A stretch of 64,000 nucleotides of DNA from Guillardia theta CCMP2712 (Eukaryota; Protista; Cryptophyta): positions 802,593-866,592 of the forward strand of contig NW_005434654.1 of NCBI RefSeq assembly GCF_000315625.1, read 5' to 3'. The notes below the pieces were generated by a model that was given only the letters and a program-made list of their open reading frames with translations, made no database searches and was not told the DNA's origin. Of the stretch, positions 16,390 through 23,690 are shown piece by piece. Within the stretch, counting starts at the first letter, position 1; every line of letters starts with the position of its first letter. The translations under genes were made by a program, and so were the position numbers.

Positions 16390-17323
16390 CTCTTTCTGCT
16401 ATGAGATCCTCAGCTTTGTTAACCCTGATAGCATTTCCTTGTTTGCTTCTCTGCCTCTTCACATCGTTCATTTCCCTTTCGAATCAGGTTCTGGCATGTA
16501 TGGTGAACAAATGCTGTCCTCTCATAATCCACCTCCTGCTCGTGCTCTTCCTTCATTCACTGCTGATCTAGATAGTCCTACTCACATGAATCCCTTCATC
16601 GATCTAGTTCTCCTCATCCCCTCCTCCCTCTCCCGCCTCCGCCTCCGCCTCTCTCCTCCTCACCTTCCCCTCGCCATGGTGACGCTTCGAGCAGTTAACC
16701 TATCTGGACTACCCTACCCCCCATTCTTGTACCCTACCCTTTTGCTCGAAATGCAAGGTGCTCTATCGCCCCCTTTTCTAGCGGAAGTACCCCCTGTAGT
16801 GGACCCCGTGGTCGTGATGGTACCCGTGCTTGTTTGGTACCTACCGGTCCAAAATAGATGTCTTCCACCCACCTCTCCATTTCCATTACCCCCTGCTACG
16901 AGTGGGTTATCAGGGGTAATGGAAGCGGGAAATGATAGATGGAGAGTTACTCTGAGATGGGTAGGGTCATGATGATGGTGGGGTACTATTTGGAATTGGG
17001 GGTAGGGTAGTATTGCATCAGGGTTGGCCCGATTGATGCCTCGAATAATGGGAGGCGGGAGACAAGAGGGGAGGGAGGGGAGGGGAGGGGAAGGAGGGAG
17101 GGAGGAAACAGAATGTAGAACAGAAGCACTGAGCAGAGCGGAAGGAGGAGGTGAGATGAGGAGGTCAAGTCGGAGGAGGAAGATGAGGACCTGAAAGGAT
17201 CACAAGCTTCACGTTGCTCATTCTTCTGCAGATGATATCCCACTGTCTACGTGGCTCGGATGGAGCACAATGACGAACGTTTGAAGATGTCATGCAGCTG
17301 CTGATCCCTCCCACTGCCTTGAC

Positions 17324-20300
17324 ATGTCATCGAAAATCACGCTCCTCCTCACCGTCCTTTGCCTCGGTTTTGTCGGGGTTTCACGGGGGGTCGGGGCGTA
17401 CCCGCGGGCTCTGGCATTGAGAGGTGGCGGCATCTTCGGGAGGAAAGTAGGAGGAAGGTTCGGAGGCACGTTGCCGCTAAGACCAGCTGAAGTCGCCGAG
17501 TCCCCGGCAGGGGATGATGCAGCGGAAGCAGCGGCAGCAGGGGCAGCGACGGAGGAAAAACCAGCCACTGCCCAGGTTGGCTTGAATGAGGAAGGGGAAG
17601 GAGGTGCGGGGGGGGAGCAGGTTGCGGAATCCTCGTCCTCCAAGTCCGCAGGGCTGCAGACGGTGGTGCAGCATTCCTACTCAGCCTGCGATATGAGCTT
17701 GAGGAGGCGAGAGAAGGAGAACGATGGCCAGGAGACCACGTTCCGCTTCAACGAGACCCTGGTCCGCTCCTACTCCGACACGGTCTGTGCTGTTCGACCG
17801 TCCTCCAAGAGGTTCGGGCTGGACTGCATGCAACAGATCAGGAGCGCGAGGTACATCTACATCGTATCGGACAGCACCGGTTTCACGGCCTCGCACGCCC
17901 TCACCAGCGTCATGGCGCAGTTCGAGTCGGTGTCGGTGGACTGGGCGGGGGACAGCGACGTGTTCAACACCTCGCAGTTGGAGGTGCGGACTCAGATGTT
18001 CAGCAACGTCAACGACAAGGTCAGGCTGACGAGGATCGTGCGGCTGGCGGCGACCATGAAAGCTTTCATCGTGTACACGCTCATGACGCCCGAGCTCAAC
18101 GAGCAGATGGTGTCTTACTGTTACTCCCTCAACGTGCCGTGCGAGGACATGCTGGGGCCCATGGTGAGGAACATCGCAGGCTTCCTTGGCATGCATCCTT
18201 CGGGCGAGCCGAGGTGACCCCGCGCTCCGTCAGCCTTTTCTGACGCTCTCCAGGGGGTCCACCAACGTGAAGAGGAAGCCGCTGAGCGACAAGTACTTCA
18301 GTCGGATCGCAGCCGTGGAGTTTACGATACGACAGGTGGAGAGGAGAAGGAAGGACAGGAGGAGGGAGGGGAGGAGCGAGGTGCGAGGAGCGAGGAGCGA
18401 AGATGGAGGGAGGAGGGAGGTAGGAGGACGGGTACAAGGATAAGGGAAGGGGTGCGGGGCAGGAGGTAGCAGGATGAACGAAAGGAGGAAGAGAAGAAGG
18501 GCATTTTTGGCTGAGCCCGTGCAGGACGACGGAAACCTTCCTTCCAACCTCGGCAAGGCCGACGTCGTGCTGCTCGGCGTATCGAGGAGCAGCAAGACTC
18601 CCCTCTCTGTCTACCTGGCGCAGCAGTTCGGCTACCGAGTGCGTCCTGCCTTGCCGCTCGCAGCTCTTGCCTCACCCTCCATGCCCAGGTAGCGAACATC
18701 CCCATCATCAAGGACATGCCGCTTCCCAAGGAGCTGCTGGAGGTGAGGTGGCTACCGATGGAGTATGAATGACTTCCTCCCCAGGTGGATCCCCGCCGAG
18801 TCTTCGGGCTCACTATTGCAGGACCATATTTGAAGAGAATAAGAAGTCGACGACTAGCGGAGACCGCGGTCACTCTTTCTCTCTTCCCTTGTTACTTGCT
18901 TCTCTCCCTTGCTTCCTTTTCTCATCCCCATCCCTCTCTCCCTCCCTCCTCCCTTATCGCCGCGTTTTCTTGCTTTGTCCTCCCTTCTCTTTCCCCCCTC
19001 TCCTGTTAGGGAGGAGCTGGATGCTGACCTGCTGGCCTGCAGCACGACACGAGCGCCATGAGCGGCAACGAGGGAAGCTTCGACTACGACAACATGAAGT
19101 ACATCAACGCCGAGCTAGCCTGGTCCAAGGGTGCGACTCTCCGTCCCGGCAGCGAGTCAACTGACGAGGAGGGCAGATCTCTACAGCCAGCATCCTGAGT
19201 GGTCGGTGATCGACGTGACCGGTCGGTCGGTGGAGGAGAATGCAGCGATCATCAACGAGCTCCTGGGCATCTCAACAGTGAGCAGGTGGCGGCCGCTGGT
19301 GCTAGTGGTGACATGCATGGCAGGGGAAGCCGACGCCGGTGGAGGCAGCGCTACATGCGCTTGACGCGAACTTTTTCATGATCGACCCGCACTGCGAGGA
19401 GGGACGGCACTCACTTGTGTTCGCGTCCGATGGGTTTCTAGAGGCGACAGGATACAAACGCGAGGAGATCATCGGTCAACTTTTTATTTCTTCTCCTCCC
19501 CTCTCCTCTGTTCTGCCCTCCTCTCCCCTCCCCTCCTTTCTCTTCTGTTCTCTCCTCCTCTCTTCTCCTCTCCCCTCCCCTCTGCTCCGCTCCACCGCTT
19601 TCACTTCCTCGCGCTCCCTTGTGCTTCTTCAGTAGCCACTCACCCTTGGGGACAGGAAAAGACATCAGCTCCCTTCATGGCCCCGAGACCAACAACGAGA
19701 CCATCGCTCAGGTCATCAGTCCTTCTAAGTCTCATTCCCTTTCCGCCTATCTTTGTTTCTCTCCCCTTCCTTCCTCGCCTCGCCTCTCCACTCCCTGTTC
19801 TCTCAACTTCCGTTGTCCCTGCCCCCCTCCTCTTTCCTTCTCTCATTCCCCTCATGGTCCTCCTCTTGTCAGATTCGCTCCAGCATCTGCAAGGGGCAGG
19901 AAGGATACTTCGAGATCCTCAACTACCGCAAGGATGGGACCACATACAAGAAGAAGCTTAGCCTTGCTCCCGTCCACAACCAAGAAGGTCTGGCCTCCCG
20001 CTGCTGCCCCGTCCCTTCCTCCTTCCCGTATTACCTCCTCCTTGTCTTTGTCCTTCTCTTGCCTCTTCCTCCTCGTCCTCGTCCTCCTCTCTTCCTCCTC
20101 CTCCTCCTCTCTTCCTGCTTCTCCTGCTCGTGCTCATGATCTTCTCAACCCGCTGCAGGAGTCGTCGAGTTCATCTTTGCAACGCAGTGCGAGCTAGATG
20201 AGAACTTCACGAAGCTGGAGCTGCTAGGGTCGGACGACGACTTCGAGGGGAACCAAGTGCTGCAGACAGCAGCGAGAGCGAAGAAGACTCAGTTCCTTGA

Positions 20301-21686
20301 CGCTCAAGCGCGAGGAGGCATCTCCGTCTTCCTCCTCGAAGTATCCCCGGAGGACAGCAAAAGAACTCTTGAGTCCATGCCGCTGAAGCTAGCTTCTGAT
20401 GGTGAGGAACTTTGCTGCCCTCGCCTCCTTCCCCCCTCCCCCCCCCCTCCTCCTCCTCCTCCAGCTTGAGCGTCAAGGAACTGAGTCTTCTTCGCTCTCG
20501 CTGCTGTCTGCAGCACTTGGTTCCCCTCGAAGTCGTCGTCCGACCCTAGCAGCTCCAGCTTCGTGAAGTTCTCATCTAGCTCGCACTGCGTTGCAAAGAT
20601 GAACTCGACGACTCCTGCAGCGGGTTGAGAAGATCATGAGCACGAGCAGGAGAAGCAGGAAGAGAGGAGGAGGAGGAGGAAGAGAGGAGGACGAGGACGA
20701 GGAGGAAGAGGCAAGAGAAGGACAAGACAAGGAGGAGGTAATACGGGAAGGGAGGAAGGGACGGGGCAGCAGNNNNNNNNNNNNNNNNNNNNNNNNNNNN
20801 NNNNNNNNNNNNNNNNNNNNNNNNNNNNNNNNNNNNNNNNNNNNNNNNNNNNNNNNNNNNNNNNNNNNNNNNCAGCATCATCATCATCGCCGTTATGGTC
20901 ATCCTCCTGCTAATTCTCCTCCTCCGCCCCACCATCTCTACCACTACTGCTCCTCCTCCTCCTCCTCCTCCTCCTCCTCCTCCTCCTCCTCCTCCTTGAT
21001 ATTCAGCTCATGTTTTCGGCAGCCTTCTTCGAGACAACAGGCTTTCTTCCCTCGCAGATCCTGGGACAAACCCTCTCCTTCCTCTTCGGCAAGGAGACAG
21101 ACCAAACCACAATCGGCATGATAGAGGGCGCATTGGAGAGGAAGACATCAGTCAGGTGGGAGAAAGGGGAGCGAGGAGGAGGAGGAGGAGGAATCAAAGG
21201 AGGAGCAGGAGCAGGAGAGTAATTGGAGATGAGGAAGGGGGGGCCAGGGAGGAGAGTTTTCAGCAAGGAGACCAGAGTTGCGGCGATGAGTTTGCAGCTG
21301 CTGACGTCAGTGATAGCACATGTATCATATGCTACAAGAAGGACGGGACCTCCTTCTGGAACCATCTCAGCCTGCAGGTATGACCACGAGGTCGTTTTCT
21401 TGTGCTTGACCGGGTTGCAGCCTGTTTTGACATGAAGGGAGAGCTGCAATTCTACGTGGGGACACAGGTGTGGGAGGAGGGGGTGGAGGGGGAGGAAGAG
21501 GGAAGAGGGATGGGGATGGGGATGGGGATGGGGATGGGGATGGAGGAGGAGGAGGAGGAGGAGGAGACGGTGGTGGTGGTGGTGGTGGTGGAGCAGGAGG
21601 AGGAGGAGCCCTTTGCTCTTCTGAGTCCGTTCCAGTTCACCAGTATTGCGAGAGAGCGACTGCGAGAAGACCCGAGCCCTCTGTAG
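17324..21686 (+). CDS. Pyruvate,phosphate dikinase/PEP synthase regulatory protein (kinase-pyrophosphorylase, DUF299) fused to two LOV-like PAS domains; N-terminal signal peptide + LRGG presequence
   Basis: [27 protein letters not shown]|[53 protein letters not shown] are PDRP motifs. An in-frame splice (ISTv|GKPT) leads into [21 protein letters not shown]|[11 protein letters not shown]...ILNYRKDGT...LAPVHNQEG|VVEFIFATQ and a second repeat LASD|[27 protein letters not shown]...[16 protein letters not shown]...[13 protein letters not shown]. Confidence 0.88.
20001..20772. repeat. Near-perfect 309-bp inverted repeat (arms 20001-20309 and 20464-20772) abutting an N gap
   Basis: 20464-20772 is the reverse complement of 20001-20309 with only a couple of homopolymer indels; the ORF track shows [17 protein letters not shown] on both strands. 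Confidence 0.95.
20773..20872. other. Assembly gap (100 N)
   Basis: Run of N. Confidence 1.
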
Positions 21687-22010
21687 TCACTTGGCGAAGC
21701 GTCGAAGGATAGTATGAAGAGGCTGCAGATCTTTCCGTAGTCCTCCCCACTCAGCCGTGGCAAACTGGAGGAAGCCGTCTTACTCTACGTGTCTCCCATG
21801 GCATCCTGAGCAGGAGGTTCGAAACGTGTGTGAAACATTACAAACAACGTTTCCATATGCATCATATTATTGCACGTGTCATTGCAATATGTTGCCCTGC
21901 GAACAGGAACCTCGCCCATATCAGTTGAACAACCAATCCAACCTCAGCAGACAAACATCAAGACTACATTTGAGATGCATTTTGGAGTCTTTCATTCATG
22001 CATGAACAGC

Positions 22011-23690
22011 TTAATAAACCTCGACGTGCCACTGGCCCTTCTTCTTCAAGCCCTCGAGGTACTCCTCGAAGTTGAGGCCCTTGGACTCGCACACTCCCCT
22101 GAGCATGTCCTGGATTCCAGGCATCATGCCCTTCAAGCCGCAGAAGTAGATGTGGGCTCCCTTGTCGAGGGCATCGAAGACCTCGTCAGCGTACTCCTCG
22201 ACCTTGTCCTGGATGTACATCTTGCCGCCCTTCTTGTTGAGAGGTCCCTCACGGGAGAGCGCGTAGTCGAGGCGCATCTTGTCAGGGTTCTGGCGGAGGT
22301 AAACCTGGAACTCCTCGTCGTAGAGGAGGGAGTCCTTGTTGGCAACTCCGAGGAAGAGCCAGGCGAGACCCTTGAAGTTCTTGCCAGCAGGGTTGCCCTA
22401 AGAGAAGACAACGTGAGGGGCTGTCAAGGACGACAAGGGAGCACATACCTCGCCGAAGAGGCGGCGGAGGAAGCTGCGGAAGGGAGCGATACCAGTTCCG
22501 GTGGCGACCATGATGTAGGTCATGTTGGGGTCGTCCTCGGGCATGAGCATGACCTTGCCGGAAGGTCCGGTGAGGGAGATCTCATCACCGGGCTTGGAGT
22601 CGCAGAGGTAGTTGGAGCAGACACCCTTCTTGGCGGGGTCCTCAGCCTTGAGCTCAGGGCACCAGTAGGTGGCACGGCGAACGCAGAGGGTGGTGGTCTT
22701 GCCGGTCTTGTCGTCTCCGTAGCGGGTGGAGGCGATAGAATAGAGGCGAACACCGTAGGGCTTGTTCTTCTTCGGGTCGATGCCGGGGGGACGACACCGT
22801 AGGACTGGCCCTCCCAGTAGGGGAGCTTGCCTGTAGATCGAGTCAGCTCCACAAACGAGGGTTCTCAGCGCCTGACCCTGATGATCGATGATGATGTTGC
22901 AGGTCTCTCCAGGAGAGTTGGGGCCAACGATGCGCTGGACGGAGATGATCTTGCCGATGAGGGGGTTCTTCTGCTTGGCGATGTTCACCTGGACTCCGGA
23001 CTGGTCCCAGTAACTGCCTCCCAACGTCAGCACCGTCAGATCACTGTCGCAACACCACTTACGGCTTGGCCTCGAGGAACTCGAGGTCCTCCCCGGGAGC
23101 AGGGAGGGTGGGGCCCGAAGGTCCGGTGGGGCTGACGCCGCTGAAGGGAACCTTGGGGATGGTCGCAGCCATGGAGAGGCGCTGGGAGAGAGCTCCAGCA
23201 CGTCCATGGCGGAGTGCTGCAGTTGCAGGTCAGAGGATGAAACGATCCTGCTCCATCTCGTCTCGTCTATCTCTCAGCGTTATCTCGAGCTCATGCATCC
23301 CACTTCTCGTACTCATGCCTCAGGTACACCAAGTCCTTGGAGGTCGGAGCAACTCCAAGGACAGTCATGGCTGCCGGACGTGCTTCCACATCACTTACAC
23401 CCTCCAACACCACGCAAGAGCTATCGCTAGCATGGGCATATCGTTGCTGTCCATGCTAAGGCATCCACACCATCTCTCCACTCCTGACATACTGGTATCC
23501 CTGCCTGCTCATCGAAGAATCCTCTCCTCCTGAACCTGCCTCGCGCTCAACTAAATCCCACGGGGATCTCTCTGTTTCAGCTCTCCGAAGCTCCACCACA
23601 CTTAGTTCTCATGTTCTCACCGACAGGAGCAGGTCCTGTGAACGCGTAGGCGCCTGCAGCGCTGCAGAGCAGGAGAGCGAGCGCGGCCAT
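22011..23690 (-). CDS. petH: Plastid ferredoxin-NADP+ reductase with bipartite presequence
   Basis: [22 protein letters not shown] (signal + Phe), [63 protein letters not shown]-terminal WHVEVY*. Confidence 0.97.

What the first reader, a model, noticed from the sequence alone, without database searches (positions are those of the whole stretch)
17324..21686. PPDK regulatory kinase/pyrophosphorylase fused to tandem Cys-less LOV-like sensor domains: candidate light/redox switch for algal carbon metabolism
Seen: an apparently intact PDRP/DUF299 domain ([28 protein letters not shown]) continues through a canonical in-frame GT-AG intron (~19279-19324) into two PAS repeats with LOV hallmarks (FASDGF..TGY..EEIIG, GPET, NYRKDG, FWN.L.L.P, G..Q). 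In both repeats the GRNCRFLQ motif is replaced (GKDISSLH; GQTLSFLF), so there is no adduct-forming Cys. The terminal Gln is kept in both, and each keeps one of the two flavin-binding Asn. Established: PDRP/PSRP are normally stand-alone enzymes that switch PPDK or PEP synthase off and on, with light acting indirectly through ADP; Cys-less LOV domains can signal by flavin photoreduction or bind other ligands. Inference: a one-component sensor-regulator linking light, redox or a metabolite directly to PPDK phosphorylation. I do not know of this architecture being described.
Basis: partly seen in the sequence, partly recalled or inferred. Interest (0 to 1): 0.92.

Follow-up and report, generated by a model that had tools for sequence, protein, structure and literature searches.

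The report
PPDK regulator fused to LOV-like domains
This Guillardia theta gene really does encode one protein that joins the enzyme switching pyruvate phosphate dikinase (PPDK) on and off to two domains descended from blue-light (LOV) sensors, but those domains have lost most flavin-binding residues, so it is a new, cryptophyte-specific regulator design and probably not a light sensor.

Summary
Spliced transcript contigs from two studies cover 17230 to beyond 22000 as one mRNA with 14 GT-AG introns. They encode 756 aa: a signal-peptide-type presequence, a complete PDRP domain (PF03618, 254 bits) and two LOV-type PAS domains. My model is identical to the UniRef entry A0A7S4KYR7. The N gap and a 99% inverted repeat lie inside intron 11, and the mRNA joins exons 11 and 12 in frame. 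The genome lacks one T at 21425-21428, which would create a false stop. The public gene model (GUITHDRAFT_85988, 366 aa) reads through intron 7 and shows PDRP only.

All three PDRP loci found in this genome carry LOV-like PAS domains, and one paralogue has the junction in a single ORF. Named orthologues are all cryptophytes. No paper was found that describes the architecture.

The light/redox reading is weak. PAS1 keeps 4 and PAS2 5 of 9 conserved LOV residues, both lose the phosphate-binding Arg, and no family member has the cysteine.

Best reading: a PPDK regulator, targeted like PPDK itself, that is gated through an invariant junction helix by a re-purposed, non-flavin PAS tandem.

Novelty: new variant of a known kind. 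Interest is moderate.

The parts
17230..17323 (+). 5' UTR. The transcript contigs begin at 17230 (X2) and 17242 (X1). It holds an out-of-frame uORF, 17292-17420, that overlaps the start codon.
17324..18213 (+). CDS exon 1 (aa 1-297, phase 2). It carries the presequence (hydrophobic 13-mer at aa 7-19, LRGGG at aa 32-36) and the N-terminal half of PDRP, including [10 protein letters not shown].
18254..18335 (+). CDS exon 2 (PDRP)
18525..18638 (+). CDS exon 3 (PDRP: DDG and the P-loop GVSRSSKT)
18689..18742 (+). CDS exon 4 (PDRP: ANIP)
18785..18868 (+). CDS exon 5 (PDRP)
19043..19130 (+). CDS exon 6 (PDRP). The public model GUITHDRAFT_85988 uses a different acceptor here and lacks 10 residues.
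19177..19277 (+). CDS exon 7 (end of PDRP: DVTGRSVEE)
19278..19323 (+). Intron 7 (46 nt, GT..AG), between PDRP and the PAS part. It is spliced out in the transcripts. The public gene model reads through it to a stop.
19324..19474 (+). CDS exon 8. It holds the invariant junction [15 protein letters not shown] (19324-19368, predicted helix aa 476-486) and the start of PAS1 ([12 protein letters not shown]).
19656..19711 (+). CDS exon 9. PAS1 motif [12 protein letters not shown] in place of GxNCRFLQGxxT; I525 stands at the Cys position.
19873..19987 (+). CDS exon 10 (PAS1: R542, N557 kept, K567 in place of Asn)
20159..20401 (+). CDS exon 11. End of PAS1 (Q588), the inter-PAS linker with a predicted 23-residue helix (aa 607-629, 20242-20310), and the start of PAS2.
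20402..21022 (+). Intron 11 (621 nt as assembled). It contains the N gap 20773-20872 and the second arm of the inverted repeat.
20455..20772 (.). Inverted copy of the exon 10/intron 10/exon 11 region. Arms 20048-20318 and 20455-20725 are 99% complementary, and by eye the match runs on with small indels to the edge of the gap. No DNA or RNA contig depth over 20491-21003. Probably an assembly artefact, but a real intronic inverted duplication is not excluded.
21023..21155 (+). CDS exon 12. PAS2 motif [13 protein letters not shown]; L677 at the Cys position, E694 in place of the second Arg.
21317..21377 (+). CDS exon 13 (PAS2: C709 in place of Asn, N719 kept)
21421..21467 (+). CDS exon 14 (PAS2: [16 protein letters not shown]). 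The genome has 4 T at 21425-21428 and the transcripts have 5. As assembled the frame breaks and a TGA follows.
21636..21686 (+). CDS exon 15 with the stop codon TAG at 21684-21686. The 3' UTR runs beyond 22000.

Best explanation
The locus is one expressed 15-exon gene of Guillardia theta. Its 756-aa product has four parts:
1. A signal-peptide-type presequence ending in an LRGG motif. The genome's single PPDK carries the same kind of presequence.
2. A complete, plant-type PPDK regulatory protein domain (PDRP): an ADP-dependent Thr kinase and Pi-dependent pyrophosphorylase.
3. An invariant short helix, [14 protein letters not shown].
4. Two PAS domains descended from phototropin-type LOV domains, separated by a long helix.

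Shown: the gene structure, the single transcript, the domain homologies, the loss of the LOV flavin consensus, and the conservation of the family across cryptophytes.

Inferred mechanism:
- The PDRP domain phosphorylates and dephosphorylates the Thr of GGMTSH in the co-targeted PPDK, as in plants.
- The PAS tandem no longer works as a flavin photoreceptor. It acts as an allosteric input module coupled to the catalytic domain through the invariant N-terminal (A'alpha-like) helix.
- PAS1 has a remodelled but strictly conserved pocket (His529, Asn557, Lys567, Gln588). It is the likelier site for a small non-flavin ligand.
- PAS2 has a variable pocket. It more likely serves as transducer or oligomerisation partner.
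For: One transcript and one ORF:
- Contigs of 2913 and 3842 nt from two studies carry all 14 GT-AG splices.
- The spliced model is identical to P0336/A0A7S4KYR7.
- The paralogue on C63 has the PDRP C-terminus, PAS1 and PAS2 in one uninterrupted 492-aa ORF.

PDRP intact:
- PF03618 matched over positions 1-255 of 256 at 254 bits.
- Maize chloroplast PDRP 5d0n matches at E 5.6e-66, with all motif blocks aligned.

Substrate present and similarly targeted:
- The only locus found with PPDK_N, PEP-utilizers and PEP-utilizers_C is on C236, and it reads GGMTSHAAVVARGWGK.
- Its N-terminus has a hydrophobic leader followed by LHLRGG.
- The Thr-x-His target is as described in PMC6019023.

PAS domains are LOV-derived:
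- A LOV-core HMM scores them at E 8e-26 and 1e-26.
- Top PDB sequence hits for both PAS domains are LOV domains.
- The predicted fold matches iLOV 4eet at TM 0.92 (normalised to the target), rmsd 1.7 A.

Flavin site lost: 4 of 9 and 5 of 9 consensus residues remain. R58 is Ser in both window domains and Glu/Asp in most family PAS2. No member has the Cys.

Coupling and selection:
- The junction [14 protein letters not shown] is conserved at 0.99, as high as the catalytic motifs.
- It is predicted to be a helix running into the first PAS1 strand.
- His, Lys, Asn and Gln at former flavin-contact positions of PAS1 are invariant in 8 of the 10 alignable PAS1 domains; the two from the divergent C87-type branch, P0134 and P0140, differ. 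By their sources, those eight come from two paralogue groups and at least three genera.
- All three PDRP loci detected in this genome carry LOV-like PAS domains.
Against: - No biochemical data exist. Ligand binding by PAS1 is inferred only from conserved pocket residues.
- A conserved pocket could equally reflect packing of a ligand-free core.
- There are three PDRP-PAS paralogues but only one PPDK locus, so some paralogues may act on another target or have only one of the two activities, as maize PDRP2 does (PMC6019023).
- The compartment (stroma, periplastidial space or ER lumen) is not established.
- A minor intron-7-retaining isoform giving PDRP alone cannot be excluded, because contigs drop rare variants.
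Confidence: 0.4

Rival explanations
1. First reader's reading. One or both PAS domains still bind a flavin and act as Cys-less LOV sensors. Photoreduction or chemical reduction to the semiquinone would switch the PDRP domain and give direct light/redox control of PPDK.
For: - Cys-less LOV proteins can signal through the neutral semiquinone, and natural Cys-less LOV-like flavoproteins exist (PMC4682037).
- The terminal Gln is kept in both domains, and one Asn is kept in each.
- The Baffinella-type member P0010 keeps GRNPRFLH in PAS1, that is 7 of 9 consensus residues, so the ancestor was probably a true flavin binder.
- The overall fold is very close to iLOV.
Against: - The window PAS1 and PAS2 keep only 4 and 5 of the 9 listed residues, against the at-least-9-of-10 criterion of PMC4682037.
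- The phosphate-binding R58 is lost in both. R74 is Glu in PAS2, and the ribityl-binding Gln61 is His or Phe.
- An acidic residue sits at position 58 in most family PAS2 domains.
Confidence: 0.15
2. The PAS tandem binds no ligand. It is a fossil of a former photoreceptor module, kept only as a structural part for dimerisation, for docking to PPDK, or for stability of the PDRP domain. Regulation would still run through ADP and Pi as in plants.
For: - The pocket residues of PAS2 vary between members: position 58 is E/D/S/L/T/Q, position 61 is Y/F/M/R/Q/W, position 89 is N/C/A/M/S.
- A third subfamily (P0124, P0229 to P0231) has a strongly degenerate PAS1.
- From general knowledge, not tested here: PAS and LOV domains commonly dimerise, and maize PDRP is reported as a dimer.
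Against: - PAS1 pocket positions His, Lys, Asn and Gln are invariant in most members.
- PAS identity between paralogues (52-57%) is nearly as high as in the catalytic domain (63-64%).
- The junction helix is invariant, which fits signal transmission better than a passive scaffold.
Confidence: 0.3
3. The PDRP domains of some or all three paralogues act on a target other than PPDK, or carry only one of the two activities, and the PAS domains direct them to that target.
For: - Three PDRP-PAS loci stand against one complete PPDK locus.
- Plant paralogues are known to have lost one activity (PMC6019023).
- Further PPDK_N-containing loci exist on C64, C150 and C1 and were not characterised.
Against: - The PDRP family is only known to act on PPDK and PEP synthase (general knowledge).
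- The PPDK here has the canonical target motif and a matching presequence.
Confidence: 0.12
4. Artefact: two neighbouring genes (PDRP and a twin-PAS gene) merged by transcript assembly, as the 366-aa public gene model would imply.
For: - The public model GUITHDRAFT_85988 ends after PDRP.
- Contigs can merge neighbouring genes. The X2 contig does run on into the convergent downstream gene.
Against: - The junction is a spliced 46-nt GT-AG intron inside a continuous 756-codon frame.
- The public model simply reads through that intron to a stop.
- The C63 paralogue has the junction within one exon.
- Independent transcriptomes of Rhodomonas, Hemiselmis and Teleaulax give the same architecture.
Confidence: 0.02

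Closest known systems
Plant chloroplast PPDK regulatory protein (PDRP/RP1; maize structures 5d0n and 5d1f)
   Same: - Full-length PF03618 domain.
- Matches the maize PDRP chain at E 5.6e-66; plant PDRPs are 38-48% identical to the cryptophyte family's first sequence (P0001).
- The SDxTG, DDG, GVSRxxKT and ANxP blocks are all kept.
- An organelle presequence is present.
- The genome has a PPDK with the T-S-H target.
   Different: - Plant and bacterial PDRP/PSRP in the searches are stand-alone proteins. None of the 96 non-cryptophyte PDRPs listed has a precomputed PAS family.
- Here about 290 residues of twin PAS are appended through an invariant helix.
- The presequence is of the signal-peptide type used for complex plastids.
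Phototropin LOV1-LOV2 and plant/algal twin-LOV proteins (PLP/LLP, 'TWIN LOV 1')
   Same: - Two tandem LOV-type PAS domains separated by a helical linker.
- These are the nearest non-family sequence relatives.
- Best PDB hits are phot1/phot2 LOV2 and Chlamydomonas phot LOV1.
   Different: - No GxNCRFLQ motif, no adduct Cys, and most polar FMN contacts replaced.
- The effector is N-terminal and is a PDRP, not a C-terminal Ser/Thr kinase.
- Assignment of each PAS to the LOV1 or LOV2 type is not robust.
Aureochromes (bZIP-LOV of stramenopile algae)
   Same: The effector lies N-terminal to the LOV-type domain, so any signal must leave through the N-terminal A'alpha helix. Aureochrome LOV domains are among the best structural and sequence hits.
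   Different: Aureochromes have one canonical flavin- and Cys-containing LOV domain and a DNA-binding effector.
Natural Cys-less LOV-like flavoproteins (LOV*, e.g. the halobacterial BAT-LOV* of Yee et al. 2015, PMC4682037)
   Same: A LOV-homologous PAS domain without the adduct-forming Cys.
   Different: LOV* proteins were defined as keeping at least 9 of the other 10 conserved residues, and they bind flavin. The window domains keep 4 and 5 of the 9 residues listed.
Brucella LOV-PAS-histidine kinase and MmoS tandem PAS
   Same: These are the best two-domain structural matches to the predicted PAS1-helix-PAS2 unit: 6pps at E 3e-17 and 3ewk at E 4e-14.
   Different: Only 18-20% identity. The relative domain orientation is not matched (TM about 0.36-0.40, rmsd above 17 A). 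The effector and the cofactor status differ.

Membership tests
PDRP/PSRP bifunctional kinase-pyrophosphorylase (Pfam PF03618, former DUF299) | Full-length match to the family profile above the curated cut-off | tested here: met
   P0336: 254.1 bits against a cut-off of 23.5, residues 178-463 on profile positions 1-255 of 256. Maize PDRP 5d0n matches at E 5.6e-66.
PDRP/PSRP bifunctional kinase-pyrophosphorylase (Pfam PF03618, former DUF299) | Conserved motif blocks, including the P-loop GxSRxxKT and the N-terminal SDxTGxTA | tested here: met
   [10 protein letters not shown] 182-191, DDG 325-327, GVSRSSKT 342-349, ANIP 364-367 and DVTGRSVEE 450-458. They are among the most conserved windows of the cryptophyte family and align with the maize chain. 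Which residues are catalytic was not checked against mutational literature.
PDRP/PSRP bifunctional kinase-pyrophosphorylase (Pfam PF03618, former DUF299) | A PPDK or PEP synthase substrate with the regulatory Thr two residues before the catalytic His in the same organism | tested here: met
   The locus on C236 carries PPDK_N, PEP-utilizers and PEP-utilizers_C and reads GGMTSHAAVVARGWGK. The target is as described in PMC6019023.
PDRP/PSRP bifunctional kinase-pyrophosphorylase (Pfam PF03618, former DUF299) | ADP-dependent phosphorylation and Pi-dependent dephosphorylation of PPDK | not testable with these tools
   Needs an enzyme assay.
LOV photoreceptor domain | PAS fold homologous to LOV domains | tested here: met
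   LOV-core HMM E 8e-26 (PAS1) and 1e-26 (PAS2). PDB hits are LOV domains at E 7e-20 and 1.5e-20. The AF2 model against iLOV 4eet_D gives TM 0.92 and rmsd 1.7 A.
LOV photoreceptor domain | Adduct-forming Cys in the GxNCRFLQ motif | tested here: not met
   Ile525 in PAS1 and Leu677 in PAS2. No member of the cryptophyte family has the Cys at that position in a domain with the motif.
LOV photoreceptor domain | Conserved polar flavin contacts (CrLOV1 N56, R58, Q61, R74, N89, N99, Q120) | tested here: not met
   PAS1 reads D, S, H, R, N, K, Q, so 3 of 7 are kept. PAS2 reads T, S, F, E, C, N, Q, so 2 of 7 are kept. The identity of the contact residues is from established LOV structures, recalled from memory, and from the list in PMC4682037.
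LOV photoreceptor domain | Binds FMN or FAD and shows a blue-light photocycle | not testable with these tools
   Needs expression and spectroscopy.
Natural Cys-less LOV-like (LOV*) redox/photoreduction sensors (Yee et al. 2015) | Lacks the Cys but keeps at least 9 of the 10 other conserved residues (YtvA G59, N61, R63, F64, L65, Q66, N94, N104, Q123 listed) | tested here: not met
   PAS1 keeps 4 of 9 (G, L, N94, Q123). PAS2 keeps 5 of 9 (G, F, L, N104, Q123).
Phototropin / twin-LOV architecture | Two tandem LOV domains followed by a Ser/Thr kinase (phototropin) or nothing (twin LOV) | tested here: not met
   The tandem LOV-type domains are present, but they follow an N-terminal PDRP domain and no protein kinase domain is found.

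The most novel reading that the evidence does not exclude
The strictly conserved, remodelled PAS1 pocket (His529, Asn557, Lys567, Gln588; Arg542 kept) still holds a cofactor or a metabolite. Candidates are a non-phosphorylated flavin or flavin-like chromophore, a haem held by the invariant His, or an anionic carbon metabolite or nucleotide such as pyruvate, PEP or ADP. If so, cryptophytes would control PPDK phosphorylation directly through a one-protein sensor-enzyme, a mode of PPDK control I have not seen described in any organism. The family would then be a LOV module caught in transition from a photoreceptor (the Baffinella-type PAS1 still reads GRNPRFLH) to a new sensor.
Probability: 0.3. 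Interest if true: 0.8.

Novelty: new variant of a known kind. Interest (0 to 1): 0.55.

Why it matters
- As far as I know, PDRP has been described only as a stand-alone enzyme whose light response comes indirectly from ADP and Pi levels. Here every PDRP locus detected in a cryptophyte genome carries a sensor-type module, which suggests a different regulatory logic for the pyruvate/PEP node in a secondary-plastid alga.
- For LOV research it is a natural series of LOV-derived domains that have lost the cysteine and, step by step, the flavin site while staying under selection. That makes it a useful case for studying how photoreceptor domains are re-purposed.
- In practice, the public G. theta gene models hide the architecture. 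GUITHDRAFT_85988 is truncated at a retained intron, and the C63 paralogue is split into fragments. The assembly also carries a one-base frameshift and a probable fold-back artefact in this gene.

Tried and rejected
- Homodimer prediction of residues 466-756 gave no verdict (score 0.00, controls not run). It is not evidence either way.
- The raw-read RNA run X19 gave only 4 reads on the locus. It says nothing about transcript ends, strand or expression level.
- Pfam on single exon pieces gave only sub-threshold PAS hits. This was resolved once the full-length product was available.
- A first attempt to scan exon 11 by reference failed on frame.
- LOV1 versus LOV2 origin of the two PAS domains stays unresolved. 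A quick tree of 110 columns put the PAS2 clade with LOV1-type domains (SH-aLRT 92) and left PAS1 unresolved, but the window PAS2's best PDB hits are LOV2 domains.
- The Glantz et al. 2016 LOV census is not held in the library, so I could not check whether it lists this architecture.
- A PDRP fused to a canonical, Cys-containing LOV was sought and not found. The searches were the top of the profile search (candidates of 412-1312 aa) and the whole-library search with exon 1.
- The chimeric-contig explanation was considered and rejected (see rivals).

Full report
**What is there**

The window is scaffold C20:802593-866592 of an 87.1-Mb, 669-contig assembly. The public protein that matches exon 1 at 100% identity is GUITHDRAFT_85988 of Guillardia theta CCMP2712, which identifies the organism.

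Laying Logan contigs of public runs on 16900-22000 gave one spliced contig per run: X1 at 2913 nt and X2 at 3842 nt, from two studies. Each covers 17230/17242 to beyond 22000. Thirteen joints were listed, twelve with GT..AG ends; the thirteenth (21377/21425) reads GT..TG because of the T-run indel described below. The fourteenth (19475-19655) follows from the record coordinates. A script confirmed GT-AG at all 14 introns.

The runs are labelled only 'RNA?', but introns removed at canonical sites show that they are RNA. Their share of sampled words (0.51) is close to the exonic fraction of the query.

**Gap, repeat and frameshift**

- The N gap (20773-20872) lies in intron 11 (20402-21022). Both transcripts join 20401 to 21023 in frame.
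- Just before the gap, 20455-20725 is a 99% reverse complement of 20048-20318. By eye the match continues with small indels to the edge of the gap.
- Neither the DNA nor the RNA contigs cover 20491-21003. I take the repeat for a fold-back assembly artefact, but a real intronic inverted duplication is not excluded. Either way it does not touch the mRNA.
- In exon 14 the transcripts carry one more T than the genome's run at 21425-21428. The evidence is the five letters CCTGT between the joint sides, and 108 record letters where the genome gives 107.
- With four T the frame ends at ...LQPVLT followed by a stop. With five T it reads [16 protein letters not shown], the expected last strands of a LOV-type fold.

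**The product**

The spliced CDS gives 756 aa. It is identical to P0336, that is UniRef100_A0A7S4KYR7 'PAS domain-containing protein' and MMETSP Transcript_33955.

- Pfam finds PF03618 at 178-463 (254 bits, profile positions 1-255 of 256) and two PAS_9 stretches (E 1.2e-28).
- The public 366-aa model starts at Met124, uses another acceptor for exon 6, and reads through intron 7 (19278-19323) to a stop. It therefore shows PDRP only.
- The C63 paralogue is likewise split into partial models.

**The family**

A PF03618 search of the whole genome finds three loci.

- On C63, a single 492-aa ORF contains the PDRP C-terminus, PAS1 and PAS2 (PAS_9 E 2.8e-35) with no intron at the junction.
- On C87, a PDRP ORF is followed by an ORF with LOV-like motifs.
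- Database relatives with PF03618 plus PAS come from Guillardia, Rhodomonas lens, Hemiselmis andersenii and Teleaulax amphioxeia, plus unnamed marine assemblies. A truncated PDRP-only gene model of Baffinella frigidus shares its N-terminal sequence with the unnamed full-length member P0010.
- Beyond the family, the PDRP part is closest to plant chloroplast PDRPs (38-48% identity to the family's first sequence). The PAS part is closest to green-algal phototropins and plant twin-LOV proteins.
- No PDRP with a canonical LOV was found, and no non-cryptophyte PDRP with a PAS domain.

**Are the PAS domains LOV domains?**

By descent, yes.

- An HMM built from 139 canonical LOV cores scores them at E 8e-26 and 1e-26.
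- All 60 listed PDB sequence hits for each domain are LOV domains or engineered LOV fusions, E about 1e-20.
- An AF2 model of 466-756 has mean pLDDT 77 and about 85-94 in the two cores. It superposes on iLOV at TM 0.92 and rmsd 1.7 A.

By function, probably not. In CrLOV1 numbering, the positions N56, C57, R58, F59, L60, Q61, R74, N89, N99, Q120 read as follows:

- PAS1: D, I, S, S, L, H, R, N, K, Q.
- PAS2: T, L, S, F, L, F, E, C, N, Q.

Yee et al. 2015 (PMC4682037) defined natural Cys-less LOV-like proteins by at least 9 of 10 other conserved residues. The window domains keep 4 and 5 of the 9 listed.

Across the family:

- No member has the Cys.
- Position 58 is acidic in most PAS2 domains.
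- In PAS1, His61, Asn89, Lys99 and Gln120 are invariant in eight sequences from two paralogue groups.
- The PAS2 pocket varies.
- One divergent member (P0010) still reads GRNPRFLH in PAS1, which suggests a flavin-binding ancestor.

**Coupling**

The segment [14 protein letters not shown] between PDRP and PAS1 is conserved at 0.99, as strongly as [10 protein letters not shown]. It is predicted as a helix running into the first PAS1 strand. A helix of about 23 residues links PAS1 and PAS2. PAS identity between paralogues is 52-57%, against 63-64% for PDRP and 18-23% for the linker.

**Substrate and targeting**

- Only the locus on C236 combines PPDK_N, PEP-utilizers and PEP-utilizers_C. It reads GGMTSHAAVVARGWGK, the Thr-x-His target described for maize.
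- Its N-terminus, like those of the PDRP-PAS proteins, has a hydrophobic leader followed 20-50 residues later by LRGG.
- This pattern occurs in 12 of 13 cryptophyte sequences and in 0 of 96 other PDRPs.
- That fits co-targeting, but the compartment is not shown.

**Verdict**

- The architecture is real, expressed, conserved in cryptophytes and hidden by the public gene models.
- The literature searches found no description of it. It exists in UniProt only as an automatically named entry.
- The flavin-based light/redox mechanism is unlikely, at about 0.15.
- I favour a PPDK regulator gated by a re-purposed, non-flavin PAS tandem, at about 0.4. A ligand-free structural role is the main rival, at about 0.3.
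- Two earlier first-stage notes of this scan flag the same architecture on other pieces of this genome. They agree with the paralogues I found independently.

Noticed in passing
window 17342-17431 (aa 7-36); L010 1264-1450 (PPDK N-terminus); L001 814-1431: Every cryptophyte PDRP-PAS protein with a complete N-terminus, and the G. theta PPDK, has a hydrophobic leader followed 20-50 aa later by LRGG. It is often LRLRGG, the same letters as the C-terminus of ubiquitin. The count is 12 of 13 cryptophyte sequences against 0 of 96 non-cryptophyte PDRPs. It may be a targeting or processing signal of cryptophyte complex plastids. I did not check the literature.
   Followed up: partly
window 21425-21428: The genome has TTTT where two independent transcript assemblies and the UniRef protein require TTTTT. 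This is a one-base assembly error or a strain difference that puts a false stop into PAS2. The DNA run laid on the locus has no depth there.
   Followed up: partly
window 20048-20318 versus 20455-20772, next to the gap 20773-20872: A 99% inverted copy of part of exon 10/intron 10/exon 11 sits in intron 11 directly before the N gap. It looks like a fold-back assembly artefact.
   Followed up: partly
window 17292-17420: An upstream ORF of 42 codons starts inside the transcribed 5' UTR and overlaps the main start codon at 17324 in another frame. It could act as a translational control element.
   Followed up: no
window 22011-23207, minus strand: A convergent neighbouring gene has an oxidoreductase NAD-binding domain (PF00175) and a C-terminus typical of ferredoxin-NADP reductase. 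The X2 transcript contig of the PDRP-PAS gene runs on about 1.1 kb past 22000 into it, so the 3' ends probably overlap.
   Followed up: no
P0235 (706 aa, unnamed) and P0236 (769 aa, Cymbomonas tetramitiformis): Both proteins align twice to the window's PDRP domain. They are tandem double-PDRP proteins, a different unusual PDRP architecture outside cryptophytes.
   Followed up: no
G000 C63 (L004) and C87 (L001): Two paralogous PDRP-plus-LOV-like-PAS genes. The C63 copy is split into partial public models GUITHDRAFT_43527 and GUITHDRAFT_39483. The C87 type (orthologues P0134 and P0140) has the most divergent PAS1 and an insertion in PAS2.
   Followed up: partly
G000 C64, C150, C1 (L005, L007, L008): Further loci match PPDK_N only. 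They may be glucan-water-dikinase-like or PEP-synthase-like genes, and could be relevant as alternative PDRP targets.
   Followed up: no
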